Positions 2,501 to 58,279 of a DNA stretch of 64,000 nt are shown here, piece by piece (the first letter of the stretch is position 1; each line of letters starts with the position of its first letter). The position numbers were made by a program, and so were the translations under genes. Source of the stretch: Mytilus edulis (lineage: Eukaryota). Where the stretch lies: assembly GCF_963676685.1 (NCBI RefSeq), contig NC_092346.1, positions 39,432,001 to 39,496,000 of the forward strand. The letters run 5' to 3'. The notes below the pieces were generated by a model, which did not search any database, had not been told where the DNA came from, and worked only from the letters and a program-made list of their open reading frames with translations.

Positions 2501-4270
2501 TTACTTTCCAAAGCTATTTGGATCAAAGTTTGCAGAAGGAGCCTTGTCCGGATCGAAGGTGCCTGATCCCATACTATTTGGGGAGAATGATCCCGCTCCC
2601 ATGGAGCTTGGGTTGAAACTTCCGGATGGGACACTGTTCGGATTAAAACTTCCAGCTCCAAGACTACTTGGGTTGAAGGATCCAGCTCCTAATTTATTTG
2701 GGTCAAATGTTCCAGCTCCAGAGTTCGGGCTGAACTTACCAGCTGACATCTGATTAGGATTGAAACTTGCTGTGCCATTCGTATTGAACATGCTCAATGA
2801 TGCTAAAAAAGAAAAATAGTTCATTTCAGTACTATGGGTACCATATAAATTGCGCCACCTTATGACAACTGCGTTGCAAGTGATCGGTTTCGATTTTATC
2901 TTGAAAGAAATAAATATGCCACATCTACATGTAGTCAGAATATTTGCATTTCAATATTAGCTAGTAGGAACTGGCCGTCTCAAATTGAGTTTCCTGGCGA
3001 CAAGTAACTTCGTAAGGTGCAGAAGTTGTCGGATTATATATATCAAAAATATGTTCGTAAATCTTCAAATGAAATACCGTATCTCAATTATACACAACTG
3101 GTTTTCGTTTTCGTTTTTGTTTTCTTTGAATTTCATCTAAGGAACTACTGGTACATATATATTGATTTTAATAATTATCATTTCTTAATAATTTCTAATC
3201 TGATTAGATCAGACCATTTGCATTTGCAAATAGGTAAGGAAATTTAAAAAGGCAAATATACTAACTCCAATGGAATATAAGAAAACCGAAGTTGGGGAAA
3301 AAACAACTTTAAACGTTACACTAAATAGTAAAAATCACCAACAAAATAACGAACTCCAAGGTAAATCCATAAAGGGGGGAGTCCAAAAAAAGTCCCAAAC
3401 AAAATCAAACACTGACTTAATCAATCCACGAAACTAATGGAAATTAGCAGTCATATTTCTGACTTGGTACAGGCATTTTTTTTTTTAAAATAAAATGGTT
3501 GTTTAAACCTTGCTTGTAACTAGTTAAACTTCCCATTTGTATGACAGTTTATTGCTCCATTACATCGATTAAAGATTGTCAAAGTTCTATTTCGAGTCTA
3601 CTTGGAATTGGCTGTTGGGTGAAGTTTTATGCACATATTTCAGCTAATTTAAAATTTTCTTCCTTTTTATTTTCATTTTATAGAAGGAATAAAAACTTCG
3701 GTTGACTTAGATGAATGTAAAGAGCAACCGTTTCAGCAGTGTAAAGTAAGTAAGTAAGTAAATTATTGATTATAGTGACATGTGTACATTATGTATAGAT
3801 TATAAACATATAATATATGATAAATATTAATACACCCGGCCCAATGGAACTATAAGTCACCTCAAATAAAATAAAAGTGTACATGTTGATTTATGATAGG
3901 AATGTTCGGTTTGGAGGAATTTGAAATACTTGCATTTTGTTAATAAAGAGGAACGTTTTTATCAGAATATAATGGTACTTATCTATCAAATTTAAAACTA
4001 ATTGTGATGAAACTTGTAATTAAAAAAAACTGTCAATGCAAATAGCCTTTTACAAAAATTTAAAAGATTGACGAGATTGTATATATAACCGGAGAAATCA
4101 CCGAATCACCCTTGTGCCTATACATTCCAAAAAGTAAAAAACTTTTGAATTTTAACCCGCCAACATTTTTCGTTTGTTATATGTGTTCATAAAGTAAAGA
4201 AAGAAGAAAATAGATTCTTACCACAATAGCATGTAGGAATGAAAACTGTTAAAAATATTAACAAATTCAT
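2501..4270 (-). CDS. G1: secreted ~116-aa protein made of 10-aa GAGSF[DNS]Px repeats, ending NSFGK-stop
   Basis: Exon1 4270-4222 (MNLLIFLTVFIPTCYC, signal peptide, G|gtaag). Exon2 2802-2501 after a pyrimidine tract + ag, phase 1 in frame (ASLSMFNTNGTASFNPNQM...FDPNSFGK*). Nine F-[DNS]-P motifs; AATAAA overlaps the stop. Confidence 0.85.
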
Positions 4271-4591
4271 TTTAGCAAACTTGTGTCGTCGTTCTATTCC
4301 ACCTGCTGGTAGGATTGCCAGATAAGACAAAGAAATTATCATTAGGTCGCAGTCAAACACGTGGTCAACACTTTAAATTGTTTGTTATTTTTGTCTTTTA
4401 TCAGTCGTTATTTAAGATTATCTGAAACTGGGGGAATTTTTATATTTCATCTGATTAATGTCCAGCTTTTATTGGATAAATTCCTTATGGAAAGACAAAG
4501 GCGATAGTTTGTTTTAAATACGTATTGTAGAGGTACACATAGATGCATGTTTTGATCATGCCAGTCTCAAAGTACCCATCACTGAGACCTA

Positions 4592-10137: not shown

Positions 10138-10685
10138 AAATGCAAAATACAAGGAAAAGAATTATTAGATAATAACTACCCTTTTCCTGACTTAGTACAG
10201 GACATGACGGGATGTGTAAATACCGAGCCACGTTAAATGGATATTACCAAAAATAAACTAAACGGTAAAAGTATTCACAAAAACAATTAAAGAATACTTT
10301 AACACGTTATTTAAAAGATGATAAGTAACATCAGTACCTATAATTTAAATTTCAAGACCATCGTGTTAAAAATGTGAAGTTGGTACGGAATATTTATCAT
10401 CAAGGTCTTCCGATGTTGTTTTTTAAAAGAGGGTGAGACGTTCTTTGACATACTCCTTGTTCATAAACTTTCTGCTCAGCATGACACGTTGACGTGTTTG
10501 AAAGTCGCATGATAGTTTGATAAACCTGTGAAATGCCCACTCTGAGTCGGGTATTAAGTCATAATCGAGTTAGAAGCATGTATCAAATTAATACTTCTTA
10601 ATACTGATTAAATAATTATTTCGATGCATTCTGACAAAATTAAACAATCTTAAATGTAAATGTAACAACAATGATTTTAATTGAT

Positions 10686-11572
10686 TTATTTTCCAAAACT
10701 ATTAAGCTTGTTTGGATCAAAGGTACCACTTCCAGTACCGCCATTAAGTTTATTCGGGTCAAAGGTACCAGTTCCACTTCCACCACTACCAAAACCAGTT
10801 CCAGAACCGAAACCTCCAGTTCCACTTCCACTTCCTCCAAATCCAGTTCCGCTTCCGAAGTTGTTTACTTTATTAGGATCAAATGTTTCAGTTGTCCCAG
10901 ATGGAGCAACAGTCGATGCGGCAAATGTGGTCATGGAGCCTGCAAATGTTGACATGGAGCCGAATCCACTGCCTCCAAAGTTCTGGTTCAAAGCGTTTGG
11001 ATTAAAACTACCCCCTGCGCCTGTTCCAAATCCACCACTTCCGGCCGCGAAACCACCAGTACCAAAGTCCTTGTTTAGAGCGTTCGGGTCAAATGTCCCA
11101 TCTAAAAAGGAACATATTTATACATTTAATGATAAACTTTCTCAAAATCTTTTTCACATACCATATTAGACAACCTATGTTGAAGTATTCTCATCTTAAA
11201 GTCTCAAAGTAGGAATATCAGGCCATAAGTTCATATCATATATAATCATTCCAAATAAATTTTTGACAGGTAAAAAATATGATAATGAGTCAATTATCTT
11301 TTGCTCCGTTGCACTAAAGTATATAATATACCTTGAATATTATTACTTGAATTTCAAATTTTAAATTGAAGACATTTATATCAAGTGTATAGTTACACAT
11401 GGATTTGATTAATGACATAATGTTGTAGAAACCCAAGGCTAGTATTTTCACGAAAATTTAATTCTATTCAATCTTTGACTTCTTTTCATCATATAAATTT
11501 GATATGCTTACCAGATAGTGGAGCCGACAGACATGCCGGTAAGAGACAAAGAAGAGCTAACCAACCCTTCAT
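10686..11572 (-). CDS. G2: secreted ~158-aa Gly/Phe/Ser-rich FDPN-repeat protein, ending NSFGK-stop
   Basis: Exon1 11572-11512 (MKGWLALLCLLPACLSAPLS, G|gtaag). Exon2 11101-10686, phase 1 (DGTFDPNALNKDFGTGG...TFDPNKLNSFGK*). Five F[DN]PN motifs, FG-rich linkers and a central Thr-rich stretch. Confidence 0.88.
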
Positions 11573-11663
11573 TTTGACTTTCGATGATGATCTGATGAAA
11601 GCGTGTCTTGATCAGTCTTCTCCACTTAATTATCTTAAGTTACGATAAGACTTGACACAATTA

Positions 11664-11670
11664 CTATATA
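11664..11670 (-). promoter_or_regulatory. Putative TATA box of G2
   Basis: TATATAG on the minus strand ~90 nt upstream of the G2 ATG. Confidence 0.4.
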
Positions 11671-18775: not shown

Positions 18776-21700
18776 ATGACAGTTTTTACCATCTTTGTTG
18801 GAATTCTAGTATCGGGTATGTATTTTAGTGTTGTTTTTTTTAACACAGGATAATTTTGAGAAAACCATTTTTGTGTTTTCGTGAATTACTTAAACTTTCA
18901 TTTATATTGGTGAATAATTATTCATAAAAACACAAAACTTTTTACCACTCTAAGGCTATATTGAAAAACACTGGTTTACGACAATCGTTAAGATCTATAT
19001 TTTGTAAATGTATTATTTTTCCGAGAGAACACATGGGGATACTCGCCGAACGAGCTTTGAAACCTCTCCCCTTGCAAAAGTGTTTGCTGGAATTCTGCTG
19101 GATATATCGAATCCGCAATCCTGATATTCCCACTAGCATCATTCGTTAAAAAAAAAACTCATTAAGGAACAATGCCGAAATTTTTACGCAATGTGGTTTG
19201 ATTGCCAAAAGGACAACTACACAACAGAGTTCAAATAAAGCGTATTAAATCAACTATAGACTCAAACAGTGATCCTAACCCATACCTTGTAGTCAGGTTT
19301 CCGACATGACAAAACATGAAACATTTTAATCGAAAAAAAACTCAATGGTCTGATTCACGTCGACTCAATTCGAAAAACAAATATTACATACAGCAACCAA
19401 CGACAACCACTGTATAACTTTCTATATATTCTAATTTGCTGTCGAAATTGATTTTCATCTTGTGTCCGATCCTACCCTTTTTATGCTTATTTGATATCAT
19501 CAATTTCAAGTAAATCGTATTGTTCTTTTAAGTTACTGGAGCGTTCCTAGTAATTCTAAGAAGTGAAAACAGTAAGTTAACATGTCGGCAACTCAATGAT
19601 TGTAACTAGAAAAGAATCTAGATAGAAAAAAAAACGTACTATGTTAAAATACTACATTTAAATGTATTTCACCGAATACAACTAATTATCTTTGCAGGAT
19701 GTTATAGTTTTTCACTACCAGGTCTGCAAAATGTCCAGACAGATGATAATTTCACAAAAACTTTTGGAATTATACCAGGAAAAAGCACATACAAAAAGAC
19801 AGATCCAAATCATTCAATCAACACAGAACAACTTGGGGAACATGTACTCTCATCCCAGGAAAAAGTTTCCACTTCCGTCTCAAATCACGGTAGTCTTGCA
19901 ACAACGCTGAATCAACTATCTGGTATGTCTGCACTTCAGTTGCTGAAAATTCTAGGAGTACAACTTGGAAGTAATGCGCCTCTCAACATCAATACAAACG
20001 CCATCATCCATCGCCTGCCACAGCAACAAAACAATGTTCCAAAGAAGCAACATTATACGGTAGAACCATTGAAACCAACAATGAAAACACTTTCAAACTA
20101 TGGACAAAAAACTGGAAGTTTTATGCCTACTGATAACAACGTCTTAAGTACACCCCGCCCACCACAGCAAATGAGCAATGCTGGAAAGTTCAATACTCAG
20201 CAACAATTGAGTCCAGTTTTCATGATGACGTCAGGAATGGGTGAACAAAGCTTCCCTGATACGTCTTCAATTCAACATCCATCTGGTTCTAATCATGAAG
20301 ATAATAAAGCAAAATTGTTTGACCCTGATGCACTGATGCAAGAAATGATGAGCTCTTCTTCTTCATCACTAGGTGCTGGGAAATATATGGTAAAACAGAA
20401 TGTTTCTCCACAAAATTGGGCACCTAATCAACAGAAAAATATTAAAACGAATACCAAAAACAGTCCTGGCATGTTTAATCCTATGCATGGTCAAACATCT
20501 ATCAACTTCAACCCTGATTCATTCAACAACATAAAAATGAATTTTCAACCAGATGCACTCTTGCTTTCTGTTAATAAAGGGACACCGCATATTAGTAACA
20601 AACTTTCATATGATCCTGATAAACTTAACAACTACTATGGAAAGTTTAAACCTGGACAAATGTTCCAAGTTGAAGATATGAATACACCGCTACCACCAGT
20701 ACATCAAAGTTTATTCAATGCCGACACTTTAAACAAAAAGTTGATGAGCAGTGCCAAAAAGTCAGATGACCCAAATCCGAACAATGAAAACACATTAGCT
20801 TCATTGCAGTCCGAAATTGTCCCGCAACCGTCATTGAAGAAAATGTCAGGTTTTGTGCCTGGCTTACTTTTTCCTGGGTTTAAACCTGATAATGACGAGC
20901 TTGGGAATCACTTTTCGGAATATGACACAAACTTTGTAGAAAGAGCAGAGGAAAGTAAAAAAAGTATCAAGCATAGATATGCCTTTGTAGATATGTTATC
21001 AGATTTACCAGCAGAGCCTGACCATTCAGTTAACCCGGGAAACCTTACAAATCAAACTGCACTTGCACCAACTAGCCAATCACAGACAACCATTACAGCC
21101 ACTATGGATACTACAACTCAAGGGACTACTTTTGTGTTCACAACTTCAACTGATAGCCATGAAAACCATAGTGAATCCAGTAAATTTATGCCTGCTCAGT
21201 CAAACCACCCTCAAAATGGATTTGTTCCTGGGTCTTTGACAGGAGATGGGCGAACATTACAAATGATGGTAAATAAAGGAATGTATAACCCTAACGTGGT
21301 CAATCAGCAGGCTTTCTCAATGAATAATATTCAAAATACAGGATCATCAAATATCAACAATAACACAACGCATCAGACGTCGAATAGTTTTGGAATGATG
21401 TTTAATTTTAATCCTTCATCAGGTAACCAACCAAAAATCAGTTTCAACACTAATCAGCAAATAGGAATGGATGGTTCAAGTGGGTCGACGTCAAACAACT
21501 ACAATACATTTTATGATCCAAATAAAATAAATCAAAATTCATATATTAACCCATTCGACAAGGCCCAGACGAACATGAATAACATGTCAACAGGGCAGTT
21601 TGATAATTCACAATTCTTAGGAAATTTTGACGCAAACAAGGTTAATATGGGGATTATTGGAAATTCAAAAAATAGTACGCAAAATAGTATGAATTCTGGG

Positions 21701-22300
21701 TTTGGTGGACAATTTAACCCAACAGAAGTAAATAAAGCATATTTTAATCCAAATGTGGTAAATAAAGAGAGAATTAACTTTAACCCTTCTAAAATGTTGG
21801 AATCTAATGCTGGCTATGACAAGAAAACAGCCGAAAGTTATACATTTGATCCGAATAAAGTCAATGACTTACATGTCAATTTTCTTCCTCCTTTTCTTCA
21901 AGACAATTCAAACTCAACTGCAGGAAACAGTTCAGGTTCTGGATTTATCCCGGGTCTTCTGTCTGGAGGTAAAGATGATAGTGGTGTATTTGATCCTAGT
22001 AAAATGAAGGCTGGCATGTTGTTTAATCCAAACGCAATGATGAATACGAACAAAAATACGACAGAAAATGGCGGCATCTCAGATAAAAGTCAAACGAATA
22101 TGATGTTTAGTCCTTCGGCTATGATCGGTAACATGAAGGGTTTGATATCGGGAGCAAGTTTTGATCCAAATGCAGTAAACAAAGTTAACATGCATTTCAG
22201 TCCTAATGAAATGATGAAACAAGTCCCTGGCAACGTTGAAAGGACATCCAAGACTGATAATCCTATAATTGGTCAAGGAAGCGATGAGAAAGTAAAATAA
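18776..22300 (+). CDS. G3: secreted ~880-aa Asn/Ser/Met/Gln/Phe-rich protein with many F[DN]P motifs
   Basis: Exon1 18776-18815 (MTVFTIFVGILVS, G|gtatgt). Exon2 19698-22300 is in frame with the 791-aa ORF and extends it 5' (GCYSFSLPGLQNVQ...). Signal peptide MTVFTIFVGILVSGCYS; repeated FDPNKVN / FNPNVVN / GF[VI]PG motifs; AATAAA overlaps the stop. Confidence 0.9.
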
Positions 22301-38900: not shown

Positions 38901-41900
38901 TTAGGTATGATTGATGTCAATAAGCTAATAATTATGCAAATTAGACAACTAATGGTTTCGGTAAAACTATAACTGACAAGATAAATCAAATTAAAAAAAA
39001 AATTATGCAAACTTTTCCATAAATACTTAGATATTTAATTTCTGACAAAAAGTAAAATAACATAAATACTGAACTCAAAACGGAAAGTTCGTCATCGAAT
39101 GGCAAAATCAAATGCTAAACACACCAAAGAATCGAACACAAATGTCTTTTCCTGACTTCGTACAGGCATTCTCAAATGTAGAAAATTGTGGATTGAACCT
39201 GGTTTATAGTGCTAAACCTCTCACTTGTAAAGGAATTTTTGTATTTCAACATACTTAGCTGTAATTACATGCTGTAACGCAAATGTATTTTATGAACGTT
39301 AACTTTCAGTTGAGAAAATATAAATGAATAAATATTTTTTCCTTAACATTTTTTTTCCTTTACATATATCTAATACATGATGCACACTTAGGCTTGTTTA
39401 GTTGATTTTCTTATATTTTATAGGAGGAAATACTATGAGTAAAATCATGGGACCGAAAACAGGATGTGGTAAATATATACAATAACATTATCTGATAAAT
39501 ACAGACTGCATGGTTCATCTGATTTCGACAGTATCTAATCGTATTTAATAGATGACCAAATTCATTCAAAATATCAGTTTTTGGAGGATAAAAAATTGTC
39601 TGACTGGGAAGCCAATTTTCTCAGAATTTCATAGCACGGCCATTTTAAAAATTGGTCTTTATCAAATAGGTTTCGTGTTTAGGTTTACCCAAGATTGGTA
39701 ATACAGATACCGTCAGAATTATCACTATTGTTGTTACTAGATTTGATATATAAAAAGTAAAATCACAAAAATACTGAACTTAGAGGAAAATCAAATCGGA
39801 AAGTCCATAATCACATGGCAAAATCAAATAACAAAACGCATCAAAAACGAATGGACAAGAACTGTCATATTCCTGACTTGGTACAGGCATTTTCAAATGT
39901 AGAAAATGGTGGATTAAACATGGTTTTATAGGGTTAATTCTCTCACTTTGATGACAGTCTCATCAAATTCCGTTATATTTACATTGATGCGTTAACTAAA
40001 CAGACACAATAAATAAAATGGTCAAAAGATGGGTACATCAGTCATCATAAATGTTACAGGTAAAAGTAATGGTGGCTTTGATCCTGGCTCCGTCAATATG
40101 CAACAAGCCAAGCTAGGAACCAGCTTAAACATGTTTGGCGGCGCTAAAGGAGGAGACCCAAGTAAAATGGATGCAAGTTCGTTAATGGGTGGATCCTCTG
40201 GAATGACGAGTGGAGCTAATTCAGTGATGACTCCAGGTGGAAGCAGTGGTGGGAGCACTGGGGCCAGTAGTGGAGGGGGAATGAATTTGAATCCAATGAA
40301 TATGATGAGCAGTATGACGGGAGGATCCGGAAGCGGAAGTGGGAGTGGTACGAATCCCATGAACGCAATTATGGGAGGAACATCTGCTACATCCAGAGGC
40401 GGAAGTAAGAGTTGATTTCTTAATATTCTAAAGGTTACAACTAAAAAAAGGAAATTTTTAAATGAATGTGTTTGCTTAATTTTCGCTCAATGCTTTGCGC
40501 TTTGGATTTTTCGGTATATTTTTATATGGTTGAATGATTATAAAATGCTTCATGCAGCTTGGTGTTGTAATAAGTCTTATAAAATATGCCTTGGCATTAT
40601 CTTTTCAATATTCAAATCTTTTATGCAGATATATTCCTTACTTGTTTTTGGTGCACATTAATAGTAAAAGAAAATGAAAAAAACAAACAAACAAAAAACA
40701 AAAAAACATCATAAACAGCAAAATAAGTAAACAGAGAATATAAAAAATAAAAGATAATGCCCCCTAAGTCATATGTTATAGGACTAGCTTGTTTTGTGGT
40801 TTGCAAACGCTTCTTTTAAAACTTTTCGACACTATTTATTATAGACAGTGGCTCTACAAGTCAAAGCGGAGGACAGACGGGTGGTAATCCGTTGGATCCT
40901 TTAGGGGCGATGATGGGTAGGTAGAACACTAATCTATATCAGCCGGTATCTGGCATATCAAATTGCAAAATATCAAATTGTCAGTTTGTATATAGGTTTT
41001 TGGTAAAATTGAATACGAGCAACATTAACATCAAATGTATACCATGGTGCAGTTGCCAGATAAAATTTAGTTTACTTATCTCTTTGTTTCAAAATAAATT
41101 TAAAGACCTAAATTCAAGTAATCTGTCAAAATATTGTCGTGTTAACAATTTTATGCATTTTTATGCATTTTTAATGCATTTTTATACTTATATATATTAT
41201 TTTCTAACTTATCTGTAACCTTTGTACTTGCATGGTTTTATGAGAATAAACTATCTATCTAACATTTGAACCACTTTATTTGAAAAAAAACCAACGTATT
41301 TTCGATTTTTTTAAAAGCTCTACCATGCCTCTCCACCTATTAACCAATTAACCATACGTTTTGTTGCAGCCCTGAACTTTTGAAACTTTCTATTTATCAA
41401 ATGACAGCTGTTATAGCAGATCATTGAAGTTTTATTTTCATTGAAATTTATAATTCTGTTTTATTTTCAATTCACCTTTACGCTTTATGACACTGGTTTT
41501 TTTTTGTATTTATTTTCATAGCACGAGGCTTGTTACGTATTAGATTCAACATCTTTTATTTTGTTTTATCTGATTGCATTTCTTTTGTAACAGGAGGTGC
41601 CCAGAGGTTTGCAGGAGGGAGTAATCTGATGGACCCCATGGGTTTTATGAATGGTAACTTAATGAAGATTGGCTTCACTCTGCTTGATTTTTTATAAATC
41701 TAAAATATATGCAAATTTGTTTACCCAAAAAAATATGATTCAAAGTCTTGTTTTGTTATAATTTCAGATCATTTATATTAAAGTATCACATATGTATACA
41801 TGTACTTGAAAGTTTACTATTAAACGTTTGCTGCATTGATACAAAACTATACCTTTGGCGCAATATCGTAAAAAAATTAGACCCTGCTTGCCTTGTTTGC

Positions 41901-43935
41901 CCCCAAAACTGATCTAAAACATATAAAACATCGGTTTGGTAAACAGTTTGAAAACCATGTGAGAAGACAATCTTTTGAAAATTTGAAGCAATCCTAAATC
42001 AGAGAAACAATTTATTGCTGTTCCTAATATACATATTTCTGATTGGTTTATGACAAAATCATATCGGATTATTTTCAAAAATACGTAAGCACACATCCAA
42101 CACAATTTTGTCCAACAAGTTATTCTTCATGCAACACCTGACATAGATTTAATTTTTAATCAATGAATGTTCTGTGTATTTCAGGAGGCGGACAAACTGG
42201 TAAATTTGGAAACCGGTTTTCCGTGCCGTTAACAGGTACGTACAATTTAACAATATCTGTTTACCATAGTTAAAATGTAAAAGATACAACATACTAAATA
42301 ATTGCATCGATAGATATAATATAATAATTAATTTTATAAATTATAACTTTAAACATGAAGAAGACGAAGTTTTATGGATTGCAAAAAAATACGGTTGCAC
42401 AATGAATATGCCACAACAATTGGAAATAAAAATTATTTTTATAAAACTGATAATTTTCAAGATACAAGATATCTCTATCTCGTTTTGCAGACGTTAACTT
42501 ATCAATATCGGGTTGATACTATATCGCCAGTGACGTAGCTCAGACAGGTGCAACTCGAATCCCAAGATGTCAACCAAGTTAATATTTTGTGTATATTTTG
42601 TTATTGCAGGAAGATCTTTGCAGACAGAAACGGGTAAGTAATCTTGTTTTATTCAAACATTTACAAATATATAGATTAAAAAAATTAAGAGTCTGCAGAT
42701 ACCAAGAGCCAATCAAAATCCATAAGTCGAAGTAAAACAGACGCACGGCTTAACGTTAAAACGACGTTAAAAAGAAAATACATAACAAATTGACTTAAAT
42801 AGATTTGGATCGTTTTTATAAAATGTTAACAAAATTAAAAAAAAATTAATTTAAATGTAATTATTAAGAATGGAAAAGGGGAATGAACCACATAATTTAC
42901 AGGATAATTTCATTTGACACATAACAGTTTGGCAAACACTAATTAGGATTATTGAGAAACTTGTTTTTGCCTTAGGTGTATTTAACCTTTTAAAACATAC
43001 TACAGCCCACACAACACATGACAGACGTATTTGATTAAATTGAAAATAAACTCGTCATAGATACAAGTATTAAAATTCTATATTTGCGCAAGATGCGCTT
43101 TTCGTCTACTAAATACTCATCATTAAAAAGTCAATTACAGTTCGAAGTTGAAGAGCATCGAGAACTAAAGTTTCCTTAACATTTGCCAAATACAGCTAAG
43201 TTAATCCATTCCTGAGTTAAAAAAGCATTTATATTTCAAAAATTCGAAATTTCGTAAACAGTTAATTCATAACTATGACCATATCAATGACAATTCATTT
43301 CAACACATGAATGCTGACTACTGGGCTGGTGATACCCTCGGGGAATAAAAAATCTCCACCAGTAGTGGCTTCGACCCAGTGGTTGTAAATAAACTCATCA
43401 AAGATACTGGGATCAAAATTTATATTTGCGCCAAACGCGCGTTTCGTCTTCAAAAGAATCACCAGTGACACTCGAATAAAAAAATGTAAAAAAACCAAAT
43501 AAAATACGAAGTTGAAAAGCATTGAGGACCAAAATTCCTCCAAGTTTTGCAAAATACAACTAAGGTTATTCATTCATGAGTTAGAAAAGCCTTAGTATTT
43601 CAAAAATTCTAAGTTTTGTAAACAGTTAATTTTATTATAACCATACCAATGACAATTAATGTCTACACAGGAGTGCTGACTACTGGGCTGGTGAACCCCA
43701 CGGGGAATCAGTTGATAAACCGACTTTGAATATCAATAAGAAAATACTGCTATACAAGAAGATAAATATAGACTAAATTTGCATTATGTGATAAACTGCA
43801 AATTTATAAATAGAATACCTTTAATAGAATATCTGAAACAATAAAAGTCAACAATCACCATTACCATTACTTTTCTTTCTAGGGAAGGGTAGTTCCCTGA
43901 TGTTGGCTAGAATTTTACAACACTCAGCACCGTAA
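35918..43935 (+). CDS. G5: secreted ~663-aa Gly/Ser/Gln/Met-rich FNPN-repeat protein with a micro-exon tail
   Basis: Candidate exon1 35918-35987 (MYTPKPVCWWYVVMVSLILLLRN, G|gtatgt). Further exons 37633-38904, 39424-39468, 40060-40404, 40845-40916, 41594-41653, 42185-42235, 42610-42633 and 43883-43935 (...LARILQHSAP*, AATAAA at 43959). All introns GT-AG and phase 1. Confidence 0.82.
43044..43710 (-). mobile_element. Tandem ~343-bp retrozyme-like repeat (about 2 units) with degenerate hammerhead cores, inside the last intron of G5
   Basis: AAATAAACTC recurs at 43044 and 43387. Each unit has the HHR-like GTTTCGTC...TCA(T/C)CAG segment; the second copy reads CUGGUGA...GAAACGCGCGUU on the minus strand. 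Confidence 0.75.
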
Positions 43936-49841: not shown

Positions 49842-52800
49842 CGTTCGTTCCAGGAGATCTTGGATTTTTAGGAAAATTTGATCCAAACAAATACTTTCAA
49901 AACTGTAAGTAGTATTCATGTAATATTATTTTATCAATCTTTAGTCAGTCTGTTCAAATTTCAGTTGAATATTTCTGATACTTTACAATTTCGGTTTACA
50001 AATATGACTTTTTTTTAATTCTTTATAGATAGGAAGATTTCATATTTAAAAAAAACATCTTCATTATAATAGAAAGGAGGTGCATTGAATAACAACCTGT
50101 GTTTTGCTATTTAAAACTAATACATTTCCCCCATTTCAGCAATAAATAACAAGAAAGCTTGGAAACAGACCTGGGATGGTTCTTGGCCAAACAAAGGTAA
50201 GACAAAACTATAATAAGACAATTAATTGTGAAGATGTTTTCGATTTATGAGTTTGACTGTCCCTCTGGTATCTTTCGTCCCTCTCTTAAATGATAATAAA
50301 ATTTTGTAGTATTTTGTTATTTGTACGAGAAAACGTGTATGCTTAACCAATCTCTCTCAGCTAAAAAAAAACCCTCATCAAATATACCAGACCTGTAAAT
50401 TTGTGCGCTACACGTGCGTTCCTTCTACAAAAGATACTTCAGTGACGCTCAAATAAAACAAGTTTAAAGCCTAAATAGAGTACGAAGATGAAGAAATTTG
50501 ATGATCCAAAATTCTGAAGGCTTAAAGACATTTGTTCATGCCGCCATTATCATAGACAATAATTTAAATCCACCGCAGTTTATCGATGTTCAAATCTCAT
50601 TATCGATTAAGAATCGACATAAACGGATCAATTAGTTGCGTTGGGAAGAAATAAGCTTATCAAAAATTGAAAACAACACGTTTAACAAGCATTAGCCTTT
50701 CAAAAAGGGCTAATCGACTCTTAGCTGATGAAAATGGAAAGTGCTCTCGATTTGTAGATTAATTCATTTACTAGAATAGCCACGTGAATCAATCAAATTT
50801 TTTTACCACACACGTGATGTCACACGTTATGAAGTAGTATATATATATATCGTTTAACGTTGTTGTTTACGAAACTCCAGAAGATTCGACTATTTATAGA
50901 TAAAGGTTACCTGTGTACCAATATCATGAATATGCATGATTGATGACCAGTCAAAATCTAATTGCTAAAATAGAGAGGACAAATCCGATACTCTACGGGA
51001 TTGAAAGACATTTACTGGGTTTGGATTGTCCTAACCAATCAATAAACTTTGATTATTCACGTCTCGTAATTTCTTCCAACCAGGTAGCAAGAAAAATTCA
51101 CGCACTAACTGTCCATCGTTCAATTCTTAATCTCGACTCCTAGGAGTCGATAATAATCTCTTGCGTCCGAAGCGCTTTTCTAGATTTACCTTCATCAGGA
51201 ACACTCAAAGCCAAACATTTGAAATCCGAAGATGTATAAGTACCGAAACCGTTGAAGAGCTATATGTCAAAAAAAATAAATAAATAGCCAAATCAATCTC
51301 AAGACAACTTTGCCTGAGGGAGTTGAAACCTTGGTTTCTTAATAATTTCAAAATGTATAAACGGACAATTTTAGTAAAGTTTGTTAAATCATGCCAATAC
51401 CGAAGTACTGACTACTGAGCTGATGATACCATCGGGGACTGATAGTCCACCAGCAGAGGTATCAACCCAGTGATGTAAACAATTGAAAGCAACACGTTTA
51501 ATAATTTATTGCCTCCGAATCAAATCAAATTTTAGTTCTCTCTATGATAATGATAATAACAGTGATATTAATAACTTTGAGATGTATAATTCTATTTTAT
51601 GCTGCTGCTTATGTATTCAAGAAGTTCAAGACTGTTATAATTCGTCAAATTTAATCATATCTTTGAGATTTTTCTACACAAAGTATCATTCTCAGGTGGA
51701 AGCCAAAACGAACTGACGACGACTAAAGCAACGCCATCAGAAGTGGATATAGAATCGGGTTTAGGGAATACAGATATTAAGGAAGGATTAGTTCAAGCTG
51801 CTCAAGGGAACAATAACCACCATGGTATGTTCTTTTGTTGTCAATATGATGTATGTTCTTGTAAAAAATTCATTGTTTGAGTCTAGCATGTCCAGATTTA
51901 ACATCTATATCAATACCGAGAAGATTTGCGTGATTGCACCTTTCCCGTCAGAAAAAAATTATGAGAACATGCACTTCAGGCCACTCAATAAATACTATTA
52001 GTTTACAAAATATGTAGTGAAATTCAGTATAATTGTATATAATTTAAACACAGTACGATTTTGACACAGTGATGTATAAATCCACACGTGTGCAATGTCT
52101 GATGGATTTTTAAACATATGAATATAATTGACATATATATGTCGAAAGAAATTTGAAAATTAAGAAACTCCATTAAATCTTATGCTAACTTTTATTATGC
52201 ATTCTAGAGGAGAAGGATAAAGTAAAGACATGGGACGGATCTTGGCCAGGTATTTATATGTAAATTAGATATGTCATCACAAATATAAACCACACACGAA
52301 AAAAAAGCCGAACAATAACTGTCGTAAAATTGTTAAATATGGGTGTTTACAGAAGGCACGGATCTATTTCATAATTTCGATAACGTATTGTGAAAATGAG
52401 ATGATGACAGCCCCTTGGGATGGAAACTCTTTGCTTGGATAAACAAATTGAGGACATTGTTCATGTGTAAGACATTATTTTTTGTTAAAAAAGATTCTGA
52501 TAAAAAAATTTGAATGAAAGAAATATTAACTACAATATCAAAGAAAATACTAATAGTTTTGGTTTAATTTTGATATTATATTGAACTTATACTTGTACAA
52601 ACAATATTGTAGACTTATTTTTAAATTTTTATTTCTTTGTCCCAGGCGGTTATACAGCAAAGTCCTGGGCTGGAGCGTGGAAACAGGAAAAATCTGGTAT
52701 ATTGATAATTAACATTTATTTTGTTGAATTTATAAAATAGTATTGTCGGAATAAATTAACGACTATGAATTGAATATAAAAAGTGCGGGAAGACTACTAG

Positions 52801-55800
52801 AGACAATAAAAAAGAGCGAAAGTCGAACAAAAAAGACAACACGTGATCAAAGGCAATTAAGTAATTTACCAGTGTCACAACCACAAGAAAGAGGACTGGA
52901 CCATTGCTACAAGCAGAACTTATAAATGAATATCTGTTCCGATTTGGAATAACCAAATCATTTTGACGTCCGTAAACTTCGAGCGAGTGCCTTATACTCG
53001 GCGTTTCTTCAAACTTGCAAAGGCTTCCTTGTTAACATAAACCCTATACAAAGCAAATCATGATAAGAATTGAAGACACAATATTTCTATTAATTAGGAG
53101 ATTTATACTCCAAATGCAGGAGATGATGGAATGATGTTACAAACAAACGGAAATTTTATAAACGGGTAAATGCAACAATAAAAAATATGACAAATAAGGT
53201 TACTAATCATTGAATAAAGATAGGGGCATACTCATAACATAAGGTCATTTATAAATTGTAAAAAGGGAAGATGATGACAATTCCTTGGTAGAAACTCTTA
53301 GCTTGAATAAACAAATTGCTCGTGTGATAGAATTTTACCGTATTTTTAGAAGCTTGGGGTGAAGTAGCATAAACAGTATACATAGTTTTTAAAATCAATT
53401 GGTAGCATTTATTAATTAAAGAGCAAACAAAAAATGGAAAATAAAAATGGTAAAACGTACTTATCAAACAAAACAATGAATCACGTTAAAAAAATAAACA
53501 TAGTATTCTGTTTCATTTAATAATTGTACGATAGGAATGCTATCTACTACTTTCAGGGAAATAGTAAAATTTTATGTTTAATTTTTAAAATTGATATTAA
53601 TATATAAACAAACTACCATACCAGAGTCTTATTTACATAATTGTCTTTCCTTTTCACCAGACAGTGATACAGCAAAGTCTTGGGCTGGAGCATGGAAACA
53701 GGAAAAACCTGGTATGTTGATAATTTACATTTTATAAAGAATTTTTAGAATTTATGAAAACGATGATAGGAAATGAATTAACTGATTATGAACTGAAAAG
53801 TCAAAAGGGGAGACAATCACAAGGGAACATAACAAAGAGCTGAGAACGAATAAAAAGACAATACCATGATCCAAAGGGAAAAAGATCGTTCAGTTATTTA
53901 AAATTGTCACAACTGCAACAAAGTGGATTTTAACACAATCAGTTGGTAACATGTTTTAATCAAGGCTATTAAATACACACACAAAAAAAACTCGATAATA
54001 TGTATTTTTTTAAAACTGTACAATAAATCACTTAGTTAAAAGGTTAGATAGCTTGTTGTTCGGTGTGAGCCAAGGCCTTACATTGACCTATAATGGTTTA
54101 CTTTTATAAATTGTTATTTGGATGGAGAGTTGTCTCATTGTCACTTACACCGCATCTTCCTAATCTATAGACTAAGTTCTCCGTTTTTTATAACGTTTGT
54201 AAGGTACAGCTGAATTGCAAAACAAAATAGCATGTTTAAAGCCTCGGTCACACCTTACCGGATAGCTCGAACGAACGCCTAACGGATAACTTTTTTTCAA
54301 TCCGTTCATGTCCGTTAGACGTCCGTTCTTATCCGTTAGACGTCCGTCCATATCCGTTGCATGTCCGTTAAGCGTACGTTTTATCCGTCGACGTCCGTTC
54401 TGTCCGTTGGAAAATTTTGAGCATGTTCAAAACTTTGAACGGACGTCTTACGGATAAAATGTCCGTTGAACGTCCGTGTTAGGCGTCCGTTTTGTACGGT
54501 ACTCGTCCGTTTCGTTTCCGTTTTGTATCCGTTACATGTCGGTTCTACATCCGTTGGAGTTCTGGAAAATAAATTCACCAACGGACTTCTACCGGACGTT
54601 TTACGGATAAAACGGATGAGAAACGGACTTCTACCGGACGTATAATGGATAAAACGGATGATGAACGGATCTGAAACGGATAAATGCCAATTGAAAATTT
54701 CGCGTCAGAAATGCCAATTATTGGTATGTCAGATTTCTTAAGGTTCATAAATTCTTATTATTCATGATCGATCTTAGAGTATAAGCACGTCTTCACAATC
54801 AAGCAGTTCTTATTCAGGCCAGACACCGCCCTTTGGCAGAATTTCGAAGAACAAACCAAAACCAGTTACACAGAAACATTTTGAATATTTATGCGATTTA
54901 CATGTATTATTATCGTCGCCTTTGATTTTTTCCGTATATCTTGTTCATCCGTTTTATCCGGTACGCTTCCGTTAGGTGTCCGTTTTATGCGTTACTCGTC
55001 CGTTGGATGTACGTTCGACATCCGTTATGTCCGGTACTCGTCCGTTTCTCGTACGTTGCATATCCGGTGTGTGTCCGTTATGCATCCGTTACACGTCCGT
55101 TTTATTCAGTCAGTACATCAACGGACTCCCAACGGATAACAATTTTGTCAACGGACAACTTTTATTTTCATCCGTTAGGCGTCCGTTCGTGCTATCCGGT
55201 AAGGTGTGACCGAGGCTTAACGTTCTACAATTGTATGAAATAAATGCTATTAACCATTTCATATATTAATTTTCATCAGGCGGTGATATCGCAAAGTCTT
55301 GGGCTGAAGCAATGAAACAAGAAAGACCTGGTAATGTGATACTAAACATTGTGAAGAATTTCTTATGATAAACATTATTATTATTAAATGTTTTTTCTGT
55401 ACAAATTTTACAAAAAATATGTTTATCATAAACTGATAAATAAATAAAGTAAAAATGAAAGGGACAAAAATAAAGAATAAGTCCATGAAAAACTGACAAC
55501 CTCATGTCCCAAAGCGAAAAACAACACAAAGACACACAACAGTGCAAAAGCAAAACAACCCCCCTAATCTTGTTTGGGATTAAGGGCTCCGGAAAATCAA
55601 CAATTAATGCCCTACTAGTGTCACCCATTATGTTGTAATAGCTAAACTAAATTGTTGGTAAATTGCAATAAAAAAAGAATAAGTCGAAGAAAAACTGACA
55701 ACATCATGAGCAAGAGCAAAAAAATAATGAAACGACAGTCACAGAGCAATACCTCCTCAAAAAATCTTGAAGAAATTGTGTGCTACGGAAAAACAATCAG

Positions 55801-58279
55801 TTCATGCTGCATTTATTGAAAGAGGGACGAAAGATACCAAAGGGACAGTCAAACTCATAAATCTAAAACAAACTGACAACTCCATGGCTAAAAATGAAAA
55901 AGACAAACAGAAAAACAATAGTACACACGACACAACATAGAAAACTAAAGAATAAACAACACGAACCCCACAGTAATGCTTTAATGGCAATATAAATTGA
56001 ATATACCCATGTAAATCTGAGACAGTAATCCAAATCAGTATTCGTCCGTAAAGCAGTCTAAGGGATTACTTTTACTGGATGTATTTAAAGTCTACCTTGT
56101 TATCAGCAACCCATTATCAAATATACCAGGATACAACATACACGACCTGAATAATCGTGTCAACTAGGAGATATATACTCCGTCTGCAGGCGCTGCTGAA
56201 TTGATGCTACAAAGAAATGAATAATTCACAAACTTAATAATGAAATCATTGCTTGAAAACAAGTCAACTAAAATACAATGAAAGTATTAACAAATATACC
56301 AAACTCCTAGGTAAATTAAATACAGAGAGAAGTCCACAAAAACCTAACAAATTGGCTATAACAACGAAAAGAATGGAAAAACAATCGTAAAATTTCTCTC
56401 TTGGTACCAGCATCGTTTGGATTCAAACATAAATCGTTAAAACTCTCTCCGTGAAAATAATTTAAAAACACTTCGACATTTAATCGTCAAAGATCTTAAA
56501 GATATGAAAACAAAATAAATCACTATTATAGTATTCGCAAAACCGCAATTCATTGGAACGACGAATGAAGACAAAGGTAAACGCAGATCTAAAGTTCATG
56601 TTTGACATTTATTTTTTATTGATGGAAATAAGTCAACTGATATGTGACGTTTGTATTGAGTATAAAATATTTCATAAATCAAATATGGTTCAAATGAAAG
56701 GCAATATTTTGATTTATCTTAAAGTGTAAATGTTAATCGTTTGAATATCAATTATTTCAAATTCACTGGAATGATAAGATGCATAATATAAAATGTGGAT
56801 TATCAATTTCAGTAAATAGTTATCAAAGGTACCAGGGTTATAATTTAGTACGCCAGACGCGCGTTTCGTCTACATGAGACTTATCAGTGACGCTCAAATC
56901 AAAATATTTATCAAGCCAAACAAGTACGAAGTTGAAGAGCATTTAAAATCCAAAATTCCAAAAAACGTTGTGCCAAATACGGCTAAGGTAATTTATTCCT
57001 AAGTAACATCATGAATATTTCTAACAATGCATTCAAATTAGGATATATGGTTATGAAATAATTTTTATATTATTCTGTTTTTCCCTTCCTACAAATATGA
57101 ATTAGTCAATTTTAATGTTCAAAAGTATTTTGGTTATCTTAAATATTCAAGTATTTTTATTATCTTTTTATCATCGAAAGGTGTACCAGAAAGTAAAGCT
57201 TCCATTACCGACAGGGAAGAAAAAATGACACAAGAAACAGGTACGTTTATTCTATGTTCTACATTAATTTTTAAGAGGAAAAATGTTCAAAGTTAGACGT
57301 GTAAAATTTGCTACGTTCTTAAAGTATTTCTGTATTGACCTCAAAACAAAAAAAAAACCCAAAAAATAATTAAAAAAGGACGAGTGAATAAAACATGGGT
57401 TGCTATATAACAATGCCAAGGTCTATCAAAATTGCAAAAAAATAAACAAAAATCAACGATGAGCATAAGACACAAAGTTGTAAATAACTTTGCAGAATAT
57501 ATCGTTTGGAATTTATAATTATACACTTTTCGCCCATATAATATTTTCTGTTCAGTGCTTTTTGAGAATTATTAAAAAAACATAATTTGGTTTTTTAGTG
57601 TACATTTATACAATATTGTATTGTAAAACATGCATATATTTACTTTAATCTATTCTTGTGAATTACCGAATCAATAATAATTTATTACTTAAAAAAAATA
57701 GAGACAAATATAAACAAACGTAAATGTAACACATCTGATGTGACACAAATACAATTATAAAAATATAGTTATTTTATACTGGTATATTTACACCATATTT
57801 CATCAGACCAAACACGATTGTCTTAAAAAAAGATTAATCTATACTACCACTAAGATTCCGAGTTGAAATATTTTTAAGATAAAGTGAAGTTTCATCTTGT
57901 AAATAACCTAAAATATAAGGCAACAGTAGTATACCGCTGTCCAACATTAATCACACCATCGTTTTCAACTTAAAAAATCACTGCACCAGCTGGTCAATTA
58001 ATTGCACTGAAATAGAAATAATACAATAAGCCGTCTTCAAATTTCCTGAACTACCTGGTCAACAAATTAACAAGGTTCAGACACTAGTCTTGCTTAATCA
58101 ATTTGACTCTTTTGTTGTGTACATGTTTCTGATACCACTGCATGCTATTTTATTATTAATATTTTTAGTTTAACAATATTAAAAGTTCTTATGTATTTTT
58201 AGATGAAAACAGCTTTTCCAACTCCTCTAGAATTCTGTCAGAGATTATTGCAATGTTACAGAAGTTGAGGAACCCATAG
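49842..58279 (+). CDS. G6: micro-exon gene (5' exon not found) with an FDPNK exon and Trp-rich W-x3-W repeat exons, at least 193 aa
   Basis: Exons 49842-49904 (FVPGDLGFLGKFDPNKYFQN), 50140-50196 (SINNKKAWKQTWDGSWPNK), 51696-51824, 52208-52249 (EEKDKVKTWDGSWP), 52646-52696, 53661-53711, 55280-55330 (xxxxAKSWAGAWKQEK-like), 57181-57240 and 58203-58279 (stop, AATAAA at 58283). All phase 1, GT-AG, no internal stops. Confidence 0.8.
51163..51480 (-). mobile_element. Retrozyme-like monomer with a variant hammerhead (51163-51204)
   Basis: Minus strand GUGUUC-CUGAUGA-AGGUAAAUCUA-GAAA-AGCGCU-UC^GGACGC; the rest of the unit shares the CTGACTACTG(G/A)GCTG(G/A)TGATACC...CCACCAG...ACCCAGTG block with the 343-bp repeat. 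Confidence 0.65.
54240..55217. mobile_element. Complete ~980-bp Harbinger/PIF-like non-autonomous DNA transposon in a G6 intron
   Basis: ~45-bp TIR AGCCTCGGTCACACCTTACCGGATAGC.. / ..GCTATCCGGTAAGGTGTGACCGAGGCT; TAA TSD; dozens of TCCGTT/AACGGA subterminal motifs. Confidence 0.85.
56815..57000 (-). mobile_element. Retrozyme-family fragment with a mutated hammerhead (56850-56893)
   Basis: Nearly identical to 45005-45180, but the core reads CUGAUAA (G8 to A). Confidence 0.75.

What the first reader, a model, noticed from the sequence alone, without database searches (positions are those of the whole stretch)
2501..58279. Cluster of six predicted secreted low-complexity F[D/N]P-motif proteins: a candidate undescribed extracellular material or secretory-granule system
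Seen in sequence: six adjacent genes (two on minus, four on plus, divergent between 11.6 and 18.8 kb). Five have a separate signal-peptide exon ending in a phase-1 intron. They range from ~116 to ~880 aa and use different spacers (GAGS, FG, N/M, GS, SQ, W-rich), yet all contain the F-[D/N]-P-x motif, often extended to FDPNK[VL]N. I recognise no globular domain in any of them. Established: Asx-Pro is a turn/helix N-cap motif, and aromatic residues spaced by G/S/N/Q linkers drive coacervation or cross-beta assembly, as in FG-nucleoporins and prion-like domains. Gly/Met/Phe-rich FGGM repeats (present in G5) occur in abductin of the scallop hinge ligament. Inference: a co-regulated, lineage-specific family of sticker-and-spacer proteins that co-assemble into a bivalve biomaterial (ligament, periostracum, byssus/foot, mucus or gamete coat).
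Basis: partly seen in the sequence, partly recalled or inferred. Interest (0 to 1): 0.9.

Follow-up and report, generated by a model that had tools for sequence, protein, structure and literature searches.

The report
Mussel cluster of secreted F-D/N-P repeat proteins
A single locus in a Mytilus mussel genome holds five, perhaps six, neighbouring genes for secreted, unstructured proteins that share a short motif found almost nowhere else in the genome; one of them is conserved across bivalves and looks like a hormone precursor, and the function of all of them is unknown.

Summary
G1 and G2 lie on the minus strand and G3, G4 and G5 on the plus strand. G1-G4 have a separate signal-peptide exon ending in a phase-1 intron, and the annotated M. 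galloprovincialis orthologue (879 aa) confirms the G3 model. The motif F-[D/N]-P-x-x-hydrophobic-[N/G] is enriched in G1, G2, G4 and G5 over every composition-matched shuffle. Paired forms of it occur almost only in this cluster in the 1.37-Gb genome. Pfam finds no domain and AlphaFold2 confidence is low.

G6 is different. It is a string of W-rich phase 1-1 microexons with one FDPNK, and its border with G5 is unresolved.

New here:
- The G4 module (about 55 aa, usually followed by Gly plus basic residues) also occurs in a unionid and a scallop, so G4 is not mussel-specific.
- G3 was found only in mytilid-like sequences.
- In G3 the motif positions are about four times more conserved than the spacers.
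- In the low-confidence G3 model the motif reads as a helix N-cap with a hydrophobic staple.

Beyond the motif, the genes are not alignably homologous. Co-expression is not supported: G5 is nearly silent in two RNA-type assemblies that hold G4. Tissue and function remain unknown. No paper or family matched. Other notes of this scan, on this same window, had already flagged the prohormone-like sites in G4, the shared NSFGK ends of G1 and G2, and the repeated G4 module.

The parts
4222..4270 (-). G1 exon 1: start codon and signal peptide (16 codons plus 1 base, phase-1 donor G|GTAAG)
2501..2802 (-). G1 exon 2: 99 full codons plus stop, with about ten-residue repeats around F-[N/D/S]-P. It ends in NSFGK-stop, a Gly-Lys amidation-type end.
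11512..11572 (-). G2 exon 1: signal peptide (20 codons plus 1 base, phase 1)
10686..11101 (-). G2 exon 2: Gly/Phe/Thr/Ser-rich, with five FDPN/FNPN-x-[LV]-N motifs. It ends in NSFGK-stop.
18776..18815 (+). G3 exon 1: signal peptide (13 codons plus 1 base, phase 1)
19698..22300 (+). G3 exon 2: N/S/T-rich, 866 codons. Orthologues are 98, 86 and 83% identical in three Mytilus species, and 47-34% identical in unnamed transcript assemblies.
26417..26477 (+). G4 exon 1: signal peptide with an A-F-A cleavage-type end (phase 1)
27641..27923 (+). G4 exon 2: starts V-R-Q, then a Gly/Ser-rich spacer with 30-nt tandem repeats; phase-2 donor
28212..28462 (+). G4 exon 3: spacer plus module 1. It ends in A-G-R plus one base of the next Arg codon.
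28602..29110 (+). G4 exon 4: splicing completes R-R-R-R followed by Q-T-S. It then carries modules 2 and 3 and ends Q-L-G-K-R-G-I-M-S-F-I-stop, with AATAAA just after.
36632..36695 (+). G5 candidate exon 1 (21 codons plus 1 base, donor G|GTGAGT). It is a weak signal-peptide candidate with no RNA support.
37633..38904 (+). G5 large exon: starts V-R-Q like G4, is S/G/Q-rich and carries FNPN/FDPN/YDPN motifs, three 57-nt FGGM repeats and SQ repeats
40060..40415 (+). G5 next exon (G/S/M-rich, with one FDPGSVN). It ends either at the stop 40413-40415 or at a possible phase-1 donor at 40404|40405.
41513..41653 (+). Unassigned exon-like stretch. A 348-nt contig of run X2 lies on 41513-41652 and then leaves the genome at a G|GTAAC site. 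It may belong to G5 or to G6.
42567..42633 (+). G6 candidate exon 1 (22 codons plus 1 base, G|GTAAGT); unverified
49842..53711 (+). G6 phase 1-1 microexons: 49842-49904 (the only FDPNK), 50140-50196, 52208-52249, 52646-52696 and 53661-53711 (W-x-x-x-W). The exons further on, up to 58279, were not worked out.

Best explanation
This is a single-copy tandem cluster of five genes (G1-G5) that probably arose by local duplication. All five encode secreted, intrinsically disordered proteins. Their functional unit is a seven-residue motif, F-[D/N]-P-x-x-hydrophobic-[N/G]. I read it as a capped one-turn helix start: Phe sits before the cap, Asx is the N-cap, Pro is at N1 and the hydrophobic residue at N4 closes a hydrophobic staple. 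Many such small hydrophobic knobs are strung on flexible Gly/Ser/Gln/Asn spacers.

G4 carries conserved Gly-plus-basic sites and a Gln right after the cleavage site. G1 and G2 end in Gly-Lys. This suggests that these three pass through regulated secretory granules, where they would be cut by a proprotein convertase and amidated at the C-terminus.

After release, the products most likely associate through the many weak motif contacts into a hydrated extracellular gel or elastic matrix. Because G4 is conserved across bivalve orders, this would be a secretion common to bivalves rather than a mussel-only adhesive.

Shown: the gene models for G1-G4, the motif specificity, the conservation, the processing-site pattern and the lack of a predicted fold. 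Inferred: the helix-cap structure, the processing itself, the self-assembly and the material role. The tissue is unknown.
For: - Signal-peptide exons with phase-1 introns are present in G1-G4, and P0001 validates the G3 model.
- The motif is enriched over all 2000 shuffles in G1, G2, G4 and G5.
- Genome-wide paired-motif patterns: 3 of 5 hits and 4 of 5 hits lie in this cluster. The hits elsewhere carry stop codons or put the second motif out of frame. The reversed-pattern controls gave 0 and 1.
- Every gene searched is single-copy in the genome: G1-G4.
- G3 motif positions are 45% invariant across four divergent orthologues, against 11.5% elsewhere. Phe and Pro are the best-kept residue types.
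- Ten of 16 modelled G3 helices begin at the motif's Pro position.
- The G4 module occurs in Potamilus and Mizuhopecten.
- Eighteen of 26 modules across homologues are followed by Gly plus 1-4 Lys/Arg.
- Splicing of G4 exons 3 and 4 creates the R-R-R-R site.
- G1 and G2 both end in NSFGK.
- Fourteen RNA-type runs from six studies hold 0.38-0.42 of the sampled words of 27000-29400. My own count of the exon share is about 0.41. One of these assemblies has only 2 million letters, which suggests an abundant transcript.
- G1, G2 and G4 have no Cys, Tyr or Trp, and acidic content is low.
Against: - No tissue, protein-level or assembly data were available.
- G5 is essentially absent from two RNA-type assemblies that hold G4, so joint secretion of all members is not shown.
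- A profile of the G4 module does not find G1, G3 or G5 above shuffled controls. G2 only just exceeds them: 10.5 bits against a shuffle maximum of 7.9. Common descent therefore rests on the motif, the exon plan and adjacency.
- The AlphaFold2 models have low confidence, so the helix starts are only suggestive.
- Convertase and amidation signals are more typical of signalling peptides than of structural materials.
Confidence: 0.45

Rival explanations
1. G4, and perhaps G1 and G2, are precursors of large amidated signalling peptides (hormone, pheromone or gamete/larval cue). On this reading the conserved module of about 55 aa is the ligand, and the Gly/Ser stretches are spacers removed or tolerated after cleavage.
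For: - The build is signal peptide, then repeated conserved modules bounded by [K/R]-R-Q-T-[S/T] upstream and Gly plus dibasic or tetrabasic sites downstream.
- Module identity is very high across bivalve orders: 71% between Mytilus and Potamilus.
- G1, G2 and a Potamilus relative end in Gly-Lys.
- A related transcript comes from a collection labelled 'merc', accession ERR1711860_343652. I take this to be a marine eukaryote transcript catalogue; that is my assumption.
Against: - The products would be 60-190 aa long with internal poly-Gly/Ser and no Cys, which is unlike known molluscan neuropeptides.
- The transcript is fully assembled in many small RNA-type assemblies, including one of 2 million letters. 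This suggests abundance rather than expression in a few neurons.
- The module strings are absent from the held supplementary files of the scallop ganglion neuropeptide catalogue PMC5996578.
- G3 and G5 lack regular dibasic sites.
Confidence: 0.2
2. These are matrix proteins of the hinge ligament, or of another shell-associated organic layer, and work like abductin or the Met-rich insoluble proteins of pearl-oyster shell and ligament.
For: - G2 and G5 are rich in Gly, with Phe (G2) or Met (G5), and G5 has FGGM repeats.
- The G4 family has so far been seen only in bivalves, which fits a bivalve-specific structure.
- Met-rich insoluble proteins are reported in Pinctada nacre, prisms and ligament (PMC7591529).
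Against: - Gly is 22-28% and Met 6% or less, far below what I recall for abductin.
- No F[DN]P strings occur in the held supplements of PMC7591529 or of the Mytilus shell proteome PMC4517812.
- The proteins are not acidic.
Confidence: 0.12
3. These are byssus or foot-gland proteins, that is, new mussel foot or thread-matrix proteins.
For: - The host is a mussel.
- The proteins are secreted, low-complexity and clustered.
- G3 was found only in mytilid-like sequences.
Against: - G1, G2 and G4 have no Tyr at all, so DOPA chemistry is impossible for them.
- G4 is conserved in a unionid and a scallop.
- No motif strings occur in the held supplements of the Perna byssus genomics paper PMC7971044.
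Confidence: 0.07
4. The genes are neighbours without a shared role. The short motif recurs because of biased composition or convergence, and some members (G5, G6) may be weakly expressed or decaying.
For: - There is no alignable homology between the genes beyond the motif (searches found no cross-hits).
- G5 is almost silent in four runs.
- G6 differs in build.
Against: - Shuffles that keep the composition never reach the observed motif counts.
- Paired motifs are almost exclusive to this locus in 1.37 Gb.
- G4 and G5 share the V-R-Q start of exon 2.
- Upstream regions share hexamers more strongly than 99% of random sets of six pieces.
Confidence: 0.1

Closest known systems
Prohormone / neuropeptide polyprotein precursors
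   Same: G4 has a signal peptide and repeated conserved modules. The modules are bounded by basic cleavage sites, with Gly as an amide donor and Gln after the cleavage site.
   Different: The modules are about 55 aa long with internal poly-Gly, and the Gly/Ser spacers are long. The transcript seems abundant. G3 and G5 lack regular cleavage sites. No receptor or neural expression is known.
Abductin (scallop hinge-ligament elastomer; from my own knowledge)
   Same: Both are secreted, lack a domain and are Gly/Phe/Met-containing repeat proteins of a bivalve. G5 has FGGM in a tandem repeat.
   Different: Abductin has much higher Gly and Met and a decapeptide array. It has no F-[D/N]-P motif and no convertase sites.
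FG-repeat sticker-and-spacer proteins (FG nucleoporins, prion-like domains)
   Same: Aromatic stickers sit on polar flexible spacers, and G2 has many FG dipeptides. A multivalent weak-contact mechanism is expected.
   Different: These proteins are secreted, not nuclear. The sticker is a fixed seven-residue capped turn rather than FG, GLFG or FxFG. There is no homology.
Tandem clusters of secreted disordered matrix genes (mollusc shell-matrix low-complexity proteins, vertebrate SCPP genes, mussel foot proteins)
   Same: The genes are tandem, the signal peptide has its own exon, the body is low-complexity, and evolution is fast in some members (G3 is 86% identical to M. trossulus).
   Different: G1, G2 and G4 are not acidic and have no Tyr or Cys. 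One member (G4) is deeply conserved. Amidation-type ends are present. None of the proteomes I could search contained them.
Pfam PF25296 'Decapeptide repeat region'
   Same: G1 has about ten-residue repeats and gives a weak match.
   Different: The score is 20.4 bits against a cut-off of 45, so G1 is not a member.

Membership tests
Prohormone-type polyprotein | N-terminal signal peptide | tested here: met
   G4 exon 1 has a hydrophobic core and an A-F-A end. This was judged by eye; no SignalP run was possible.
Prohormone-type polyprotein | Repeated conserved peptides flanked by di- or polybasic sites, with Gly as amide donor | tested here: met
   Splicing of exons 3 and 4 forms R-R-R-R, and the last module ends Q-L-G-K-R. 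Eighteen of 26 modules in homologues are followed by Gly plus Lys/Arg.
Prohormone-type polyprotein | Products detected as processed, amidated peptides; expression in neuroendocrine cells | not testable with these tools
   Tissue labels of the runs are coded and no peptide data were available. The module strings are absent from the held supplements of PMC5996578.
Abductin | Tandem decapeptide array of the FGGMGGGNAG type with very high Gly and Met (from my own knowledge) | tested here: not met
   G5 has only three 19-aa repeats with FGGM, with Gly 22% and Met 6%. G2 has Gly 28% and two Met in 137 aa.
Abductin | Sequence homology to abductin; expression in ligament-secreting epithelium | not tested
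   No abductin reference sequence was available by reference, and no tissue data.
Mussel foot proteins / thread matrix proteins | Tyr-rich, so that DOPA can form | tested here: not met
   Tyr count is 0 in G1, G2 and G4, 4 in G5 and 17 of 866 in G3.
Acidic shell-matrix proteins | Asp/Glu-rich calcium-binding regions | tested here: not met
   D+E counts are 4, 6, 10 and 7 in G1, G2, G4 and G5, and the pI ranges from 4.9 to 9.9.
Any Pfam family | Score at or above the gathering cut-off | tested here: not met
   There were no hits for G2-G5 or for the homologues scanned. G1 has only sub-threshold repeat matches.
   This is met for G1-G5. G6 has a single FDPNK among the exons I could define.
   The G4-module profile scores G1, G3 and G5 within the shuffle range and G2 just above it. 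Own-genome searches with G1, G2 and G3 hit only themselves.

The most novel reading that the evidence does not exclude
This would be an ancient, bivalve-specific class of extracellular sticker-and-spacer proteins. They would be made like peptide hormones: cut by a convertase, capped with pyroglutamate and amidated in dense-core granules, perhaps stored there as a condensate or functional amyloid through the F-N-F-F-N-P-type segments. Once released, they would build a hydrated gel or elastomer through capped one-turn helix knobs. That would be a secreted counterpart of FG-type hydrogels, with a defined, conserved seven-residue sticker.
Probability: 0.2. Interest if true: 0.75.

Novelty: new variant of a known kind. 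Interest (0 to 1): 0.5.

Why it matters
If the reading holds, the locus gives materials scientists a natural and simple sticker grammar, F-[D/N]-P-x-x-hydrophobic-[N/G] on Gly/Ser/Gln spacers. The stickers are conserved while the spacers drift, which makes the grammar directly testable with short recombinant modules.

It also raises a biological question: why does a bivalve-wide secreted protein carry the full set of hormone-type processing signals? An answer would link peptide-processing machinery to the making of an extracellular material, or it would reveal an unknown large peptide signal in bivalves.

For genome annotation, the locus turns several 'uncharacterized' or misnamed genes ('homeobox protein 2-like' in M. 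trossulus) into a defined family.

Tried and rejected
- The homologue search with the large G5 exon found nothing, because low-complexity candidates saturated the list. This says nothing about orthologues.
- The profile search with the G3 alignment added no new taxa.
- Both ESM Atlas look-ups gave no usable hit.
It showed only repeat-derived peaks (37201-37400, 39601-40000) and depth 3-5 contigs in X2. These also cover non-exon parts, so the G5 splicing stays unproven.
- A triple F[DN]P DNA pattern was useless genome-wide, because satellites dominate and the control count is similar. The two stricter paired patterns replaced it.
- A weak own-genome hit of G1 on contig C8 turned out to be an unrelated tandem repeat.
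- Full-text searches for motif peptides and accession numbers found nothing relevant.
- The held supplementary files of four papers contained none of the strings: scallop neuropeptides, Pinctada Met-rich proteins, Mytilus shell proteome and Perna byssus genomics.
- No complex prediction was run, since no specific binding pair is claimed.


Full report
**Source and layout.** The window is AT-rich (about 33% G+C) and has no N runs. It lies at contig C3, 39,432,001-39,496,000, of a 1.37-Gb genome. The 791-codon ORF at 19925-22300 is 98% identical to 'uncharacterized protein LOC143068882' of Mytilus galloprovincialis. It is 86% identical to a M. trossulus protein misnamed 'homeobox protein 2-like', and 83% to an unnamed M. 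coruscus protein. The host is therefore a Mytilus mussel.

**Gene models, G1-G3.**
- G1 (minus strand) has its ATG at 4270, then 16 codons plus one base before G|GTAAG. The acceptor lies before 2802 and 99 further codons run to the stop at 2501-2503, giving 116 aa.
- G2 (minus strand) has its ATG at 11572, then 20 codons plus one base. Exon 2 is 11101-10686.
- G3 (plus strand) has exon 1 at 18776-18815 and exon 2 at 19698-22300. The join reproduces the N-terminus of the annotated 879-aa orthologue exactly.

**Gene model, G4 (plus strand).** It has four coding exons: 26417-26477, 27641-27923, 28212-28462 and 28602-29110.
- The exon 3/4 splice builds the fourth Arg codon of an R-R-R-R site.
- The frame ends Q-L-G-K-R-G-I-M-S-F-I-stop, with AATAAA right behind.
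- Fourteen RNA-type runs from six studies and two species labels hold 0.38-0.42 of the sampled 31-letter words of 27000-29400. DNA-type runs hold 0.51-0.77.
- I count about 978 of 2371 words lying wholly inside the three exons of that stretch, or 0.41. The RNA-type runs therefore hold the exons and not the introns.
- One such assembly has only 2 million letters, so the transcript is probably abundant there.

**Gene model, G5 (plus strand).**
- It has a 1272-nt exon (37633-38904) that begins V-R-Q like G4 exon 2.
- A second exon starts at 40060. It ends at the stop 40413-40415 or at a possible phase-1 donor at 40404|40405.
- Its first exon is only a candidate (ATG 36632).

**G6 differs in kind.**
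- It has a candidate first exon (ATG 42567).
- It then has phase 1-1 microexons of 14-21 codons, most with W-x-x-x-W.
- Only one of them (49842-49904) holds FDPNK.
- A 348-nt contig of run X2 lies on 41513-41652 and leaves the genome at a G|GTAAC site. The G5/G6 border is therefore open, and they could even be one gene.

**The motif is not a composition artefact.**
- F[DN]P occurs 7, 5, 7 and 10 times in G1, G2, G4 and G5. The means of 2000 composition-preserving shuffles are 0.09-0.22, and no shuffle reached the observed count.
- The longer form with a hydrophobic residue three places after the Pro behaves the same way.
- The G3 row was translated out of frame and is not used. The G3 orthologue P0001 has 11 F[DN]P.
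- Instances in all five genes fit [F/Y]-[D/N/S]-P-[N/D/S]-x-[V/L/M/A]-[N/G/M].

**The motif is specific to this locus.**
- The DNA pattern for FDPNK followed after 5-15 codons by F[DN]P has five matches in 1.37 Gb. Three are in G1/G2 and two are elsewhere with stop codons. The control count is 0.
- The pattern for F[DN]P[DN]-x-hydrophobic-N followed by F[DN]P has five matches. Four are in G2, G3 and G4 (twice). The fifth has its second motif out of frame. The control count is 1.
- G1, G2, G3 and G4 are each single-copy in the genome. A weak hit elsewhere was an unrelated repeat.

**Are the genes a family?**
- A profile of the G4 module scores the three G4 modules at about 102-103 bits.
- It scores G1, G3 and G5 within the range of their shuffled versions. 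G2 is just above that range, at 10.5 bits against a shuffle maximum of 7.9.
- Own-genome searches with G1, G2 and G3 find only themselves.
- Common origin therefore rests on four things: the locus-exclusive motif, the shared exon plan (a signal exon ending in phase 1, which is common among secreted proteins generally), the V-R-Q start shared by G4 and G5, and adjacency.
- I consider tandem duplication followed by repeat turnover the simplest account, but it is an inference.

**Conservation of G3.**
- G3 has full-length relatives at 47%, 46%, 36% and 34% identity in unnamed transcript assemblies. A profile search added none.
- Across four divergent orthologues, 45% of residues in motif heptads are invariant against 11.5% elsewhere (odds ratio 6.3, Fisher p 2e-13).
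- Phe (40%) and Pro (34%) are the best-conserved residue types.
- This is the expected signature of conserved stickers and drifting spacers.

**Conservation of G4.**
- An exhaustive HMMER scan of 1.84 billion representatives with G4 exon 4 gave only 24 hits.
- The named hits are Potamilus streckersoni KAK3604401 (71% identity over about 137 aa) and KAK3604399. These two are locus tags 015535 and 015533 and are both listed with a longest contig of 531,025 bases, probably the same contig.
- The other named hit is Mizuhopecten yessoensis OWF35745.
- The module is therefore old in bivalves, and 'lineage-specific' does not hold for G4.
- The Potamilus and scallop proteins also carry stand-alone FDPN-x-[L/I]-[Y/N] motifs outside the module.

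**Processing signals.**
- Among 26 modules in the window and its homologues, 18 are followed within a few residues by Gly plus one to four Lys/Arg.
- Several modules are preceded by [K/R]-R-Q-T-[S/T].
- G1 and G2 both end in N-S-F-G-K-stop. One Potamilus protein ends in M-G-K-stop.
- From established knowledge of secretory processing, this is the substrate pattern for proprotein convertases, carboxypeptidase and the amidating enzyme. The N-terminal Gln could cyclise to pyroglutamate.
- Other notes of this scan on the same window had flagged these features. I checked the splice-made tetrabasic site, the NSFGK ends and the threefold module myself.

**Structure.**
- No Pfam family reaches its cut-off. 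G1 has only sub-threshold repeat matches.
- AlphaFold2 gives mean pLDDT 54 (pTM 0.16) for G4 exon 4 with a 23-row alignment, and 32 (pTM 0.20) for G3. No globular fold is predicted.
- In the G3 model, 10 of the 16 short helices begin exactly at the Pro position of an F-x-P motif.
- This fits textbook helix capping as I recall it (Richardson and Richardson 1988; Muñoz, Blanco and Serrano 1995; Aurora and Rose 1998). Asp/Asn/Ser act as N-cap, Pro is favoured at N1, and a hydrophobic staple forms between the residue before the cap (Phe) and N4 (Val/Leu/Met). The closing Asn or Gly are typical C-cap residues.
- The models are of low confidence, so this is a reasoned reading and not a demonstration.

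**Expression.**
- In X8 and X2 (assemblies that hold G4) and in two raw RNA runs, the only strong signals are at 37201-37400 and 39601-40000. Both behave as high-copy repeats, with many variants and loose ends.
- The G5 exons have zero depth in X8, X21 and X24. X2 shows only depth 3-5 contigs, and these also touch non-exon parts.
- Contigs show presence and not absence. Even so, this gives no support for co-expression of G4 and G5.

**Upstream regions.**
- The 150 bases upstream of the six start codons share CTTATC (a GATA-type site) in 5 of 6, ACTGAT in 5 of 6 and CACCTG/CAGGTG (an E-box) in 4 of 6.
- Five of the 19 such E-boxes in the whole window lie within 110 bases of these start codons.
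- Only about 1% of random sets of six pieces reach the best observed sharing.
- This is post hoc and weak. It could reflect shared regulation or simply shared descent.

**What it is not.**
- G1, G2 and G4 contain no Tyr, Trp or Cys. This excludes DOPA-based adhesive chemistry and disulfide networks for them.
- The proteins are not acidic.
- G5 has three FGGM repeats, but its Gly and Met contents are far below those of abductin.
- Full-text searches for the peptides and accessions, and the held supplements of four relevant papers, gave no match.
- The Pinctada paper reports Met-rich insoluble proteins in shell and ligament. Its held sequence files contain no F[DN]P strings.

**Verdict.**
- The best reading (0.45) is that these are secreted disordered proteins with capped-turn stickers. 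G4, and probably G1 and G2, are processed like prohormones. The products form or condition a hydrated extracellular matrix that bivalves share.
- The main rival (0.2) is that G4, G1 and G2 yield large amidated signalling peptides.
- The ligament or shell-layer reading (0.12), the byssus reading (0.07) and the no-shared-role reading (0.1) remain open.
- The kind of thing is known: a tandem cluster of secreted low-complexity genes. This family is new in three respects: the fixed sticker, the deep conservation of one member and the hormone-type processing signals. I could not find it described.
- Tissue-resolved expression and proteomics that allow for amidation would decide between the readings.

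Noticed in passing
window 4271-4420(-), 11573-11722(-), 18626-18775, 26267-26416, 36482-36631, 42417-42566: The 150 bases upstream of the six (candidate) start codons share CTTATC (a GATA-type site, 5 of 6), ACTGAT (5 of 6) and CAGGTG/CACCTG (an E-box, 4 of 6). Five of the 19 such E-boxes in the window lie here. About 1% of random six-piece sets reach this level of sharing. G1 and G4 also share CTGCGACCT.
   Followed up: partly
window 37201-37400 and 39601-40000: Two short stretches around the large G5 exon draw very high depth in all four RNA-type runs (up to about 3e5 summed word depth in X2). They show many variants, loose ends and back-joints. They look like members of a high-copy transcribed repeat family (SINE- or MITE-like).
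   Followed up: no
window 50140-50196, 52208-52249, 52646-52696, 53661-53711: These phase 1-1 microexons encode W-x-x-x-W (T-W-D-G-S-W-P and S-W-A-G-A-W-K-Q-E-K), and two of them are near-duplicates about 1 kb apart. The Trp spacing is one residue wider than the W-x-x-W C-mannosylation consensus, so the likeness is loose. The gene they belong to (G6, or the tail of G5) is not resolved.
   Followed up: partly
window 41513-41653: A 348-nt contig of run X2 (depth 5.6) matches 41513-41652 and then leaves the genome at a G|GTAAC donor-like site. This hints at a spliced exon between G5 and G6.
   Followed up: no
window 15155-15616 and 34893-35390: Two tandem arrays with periods of 161 nt (2.9 copies, 93% matches) and 163-168 nt (2.5-3.1 copies) lie in the G2/G3 and G4/G5 intergenic regions.
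   Followed up: no
window 44855-45058(-) and 56717-56869(-); also 16872(-) and 39890(-): Dispersed repeat copies show up as near-identical open frames: T-K-R-A-S-G-V-L-N-Y-N-P-G-T-F-D-N-Y occurs twice, and M-P-V-P-S-Q-E-Y-D-S... occurs twice. They are probably fragments of transposable elements.
   Followed up: no
window 10681-11169(+), 37759-38151(+), 38491-38853(+), 40022-40360(-): Long ORFs lie in other frames or on the opposite strand of the Gly/Ser-rich exons (Pro/Leu/Val-rich translations). They are mirror products of the biased coding sequence, not separate genes.
   Followed up: partly
P0002 (M. trossulus orthologue of G3): The public name 'homeobox protein 2-like' is spurious. No homeobox or any other Pfam domain is present in the orthologue family. 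The name probably comes from Asn/Gln-rich low-complexity similarity.
   Followed up: partly
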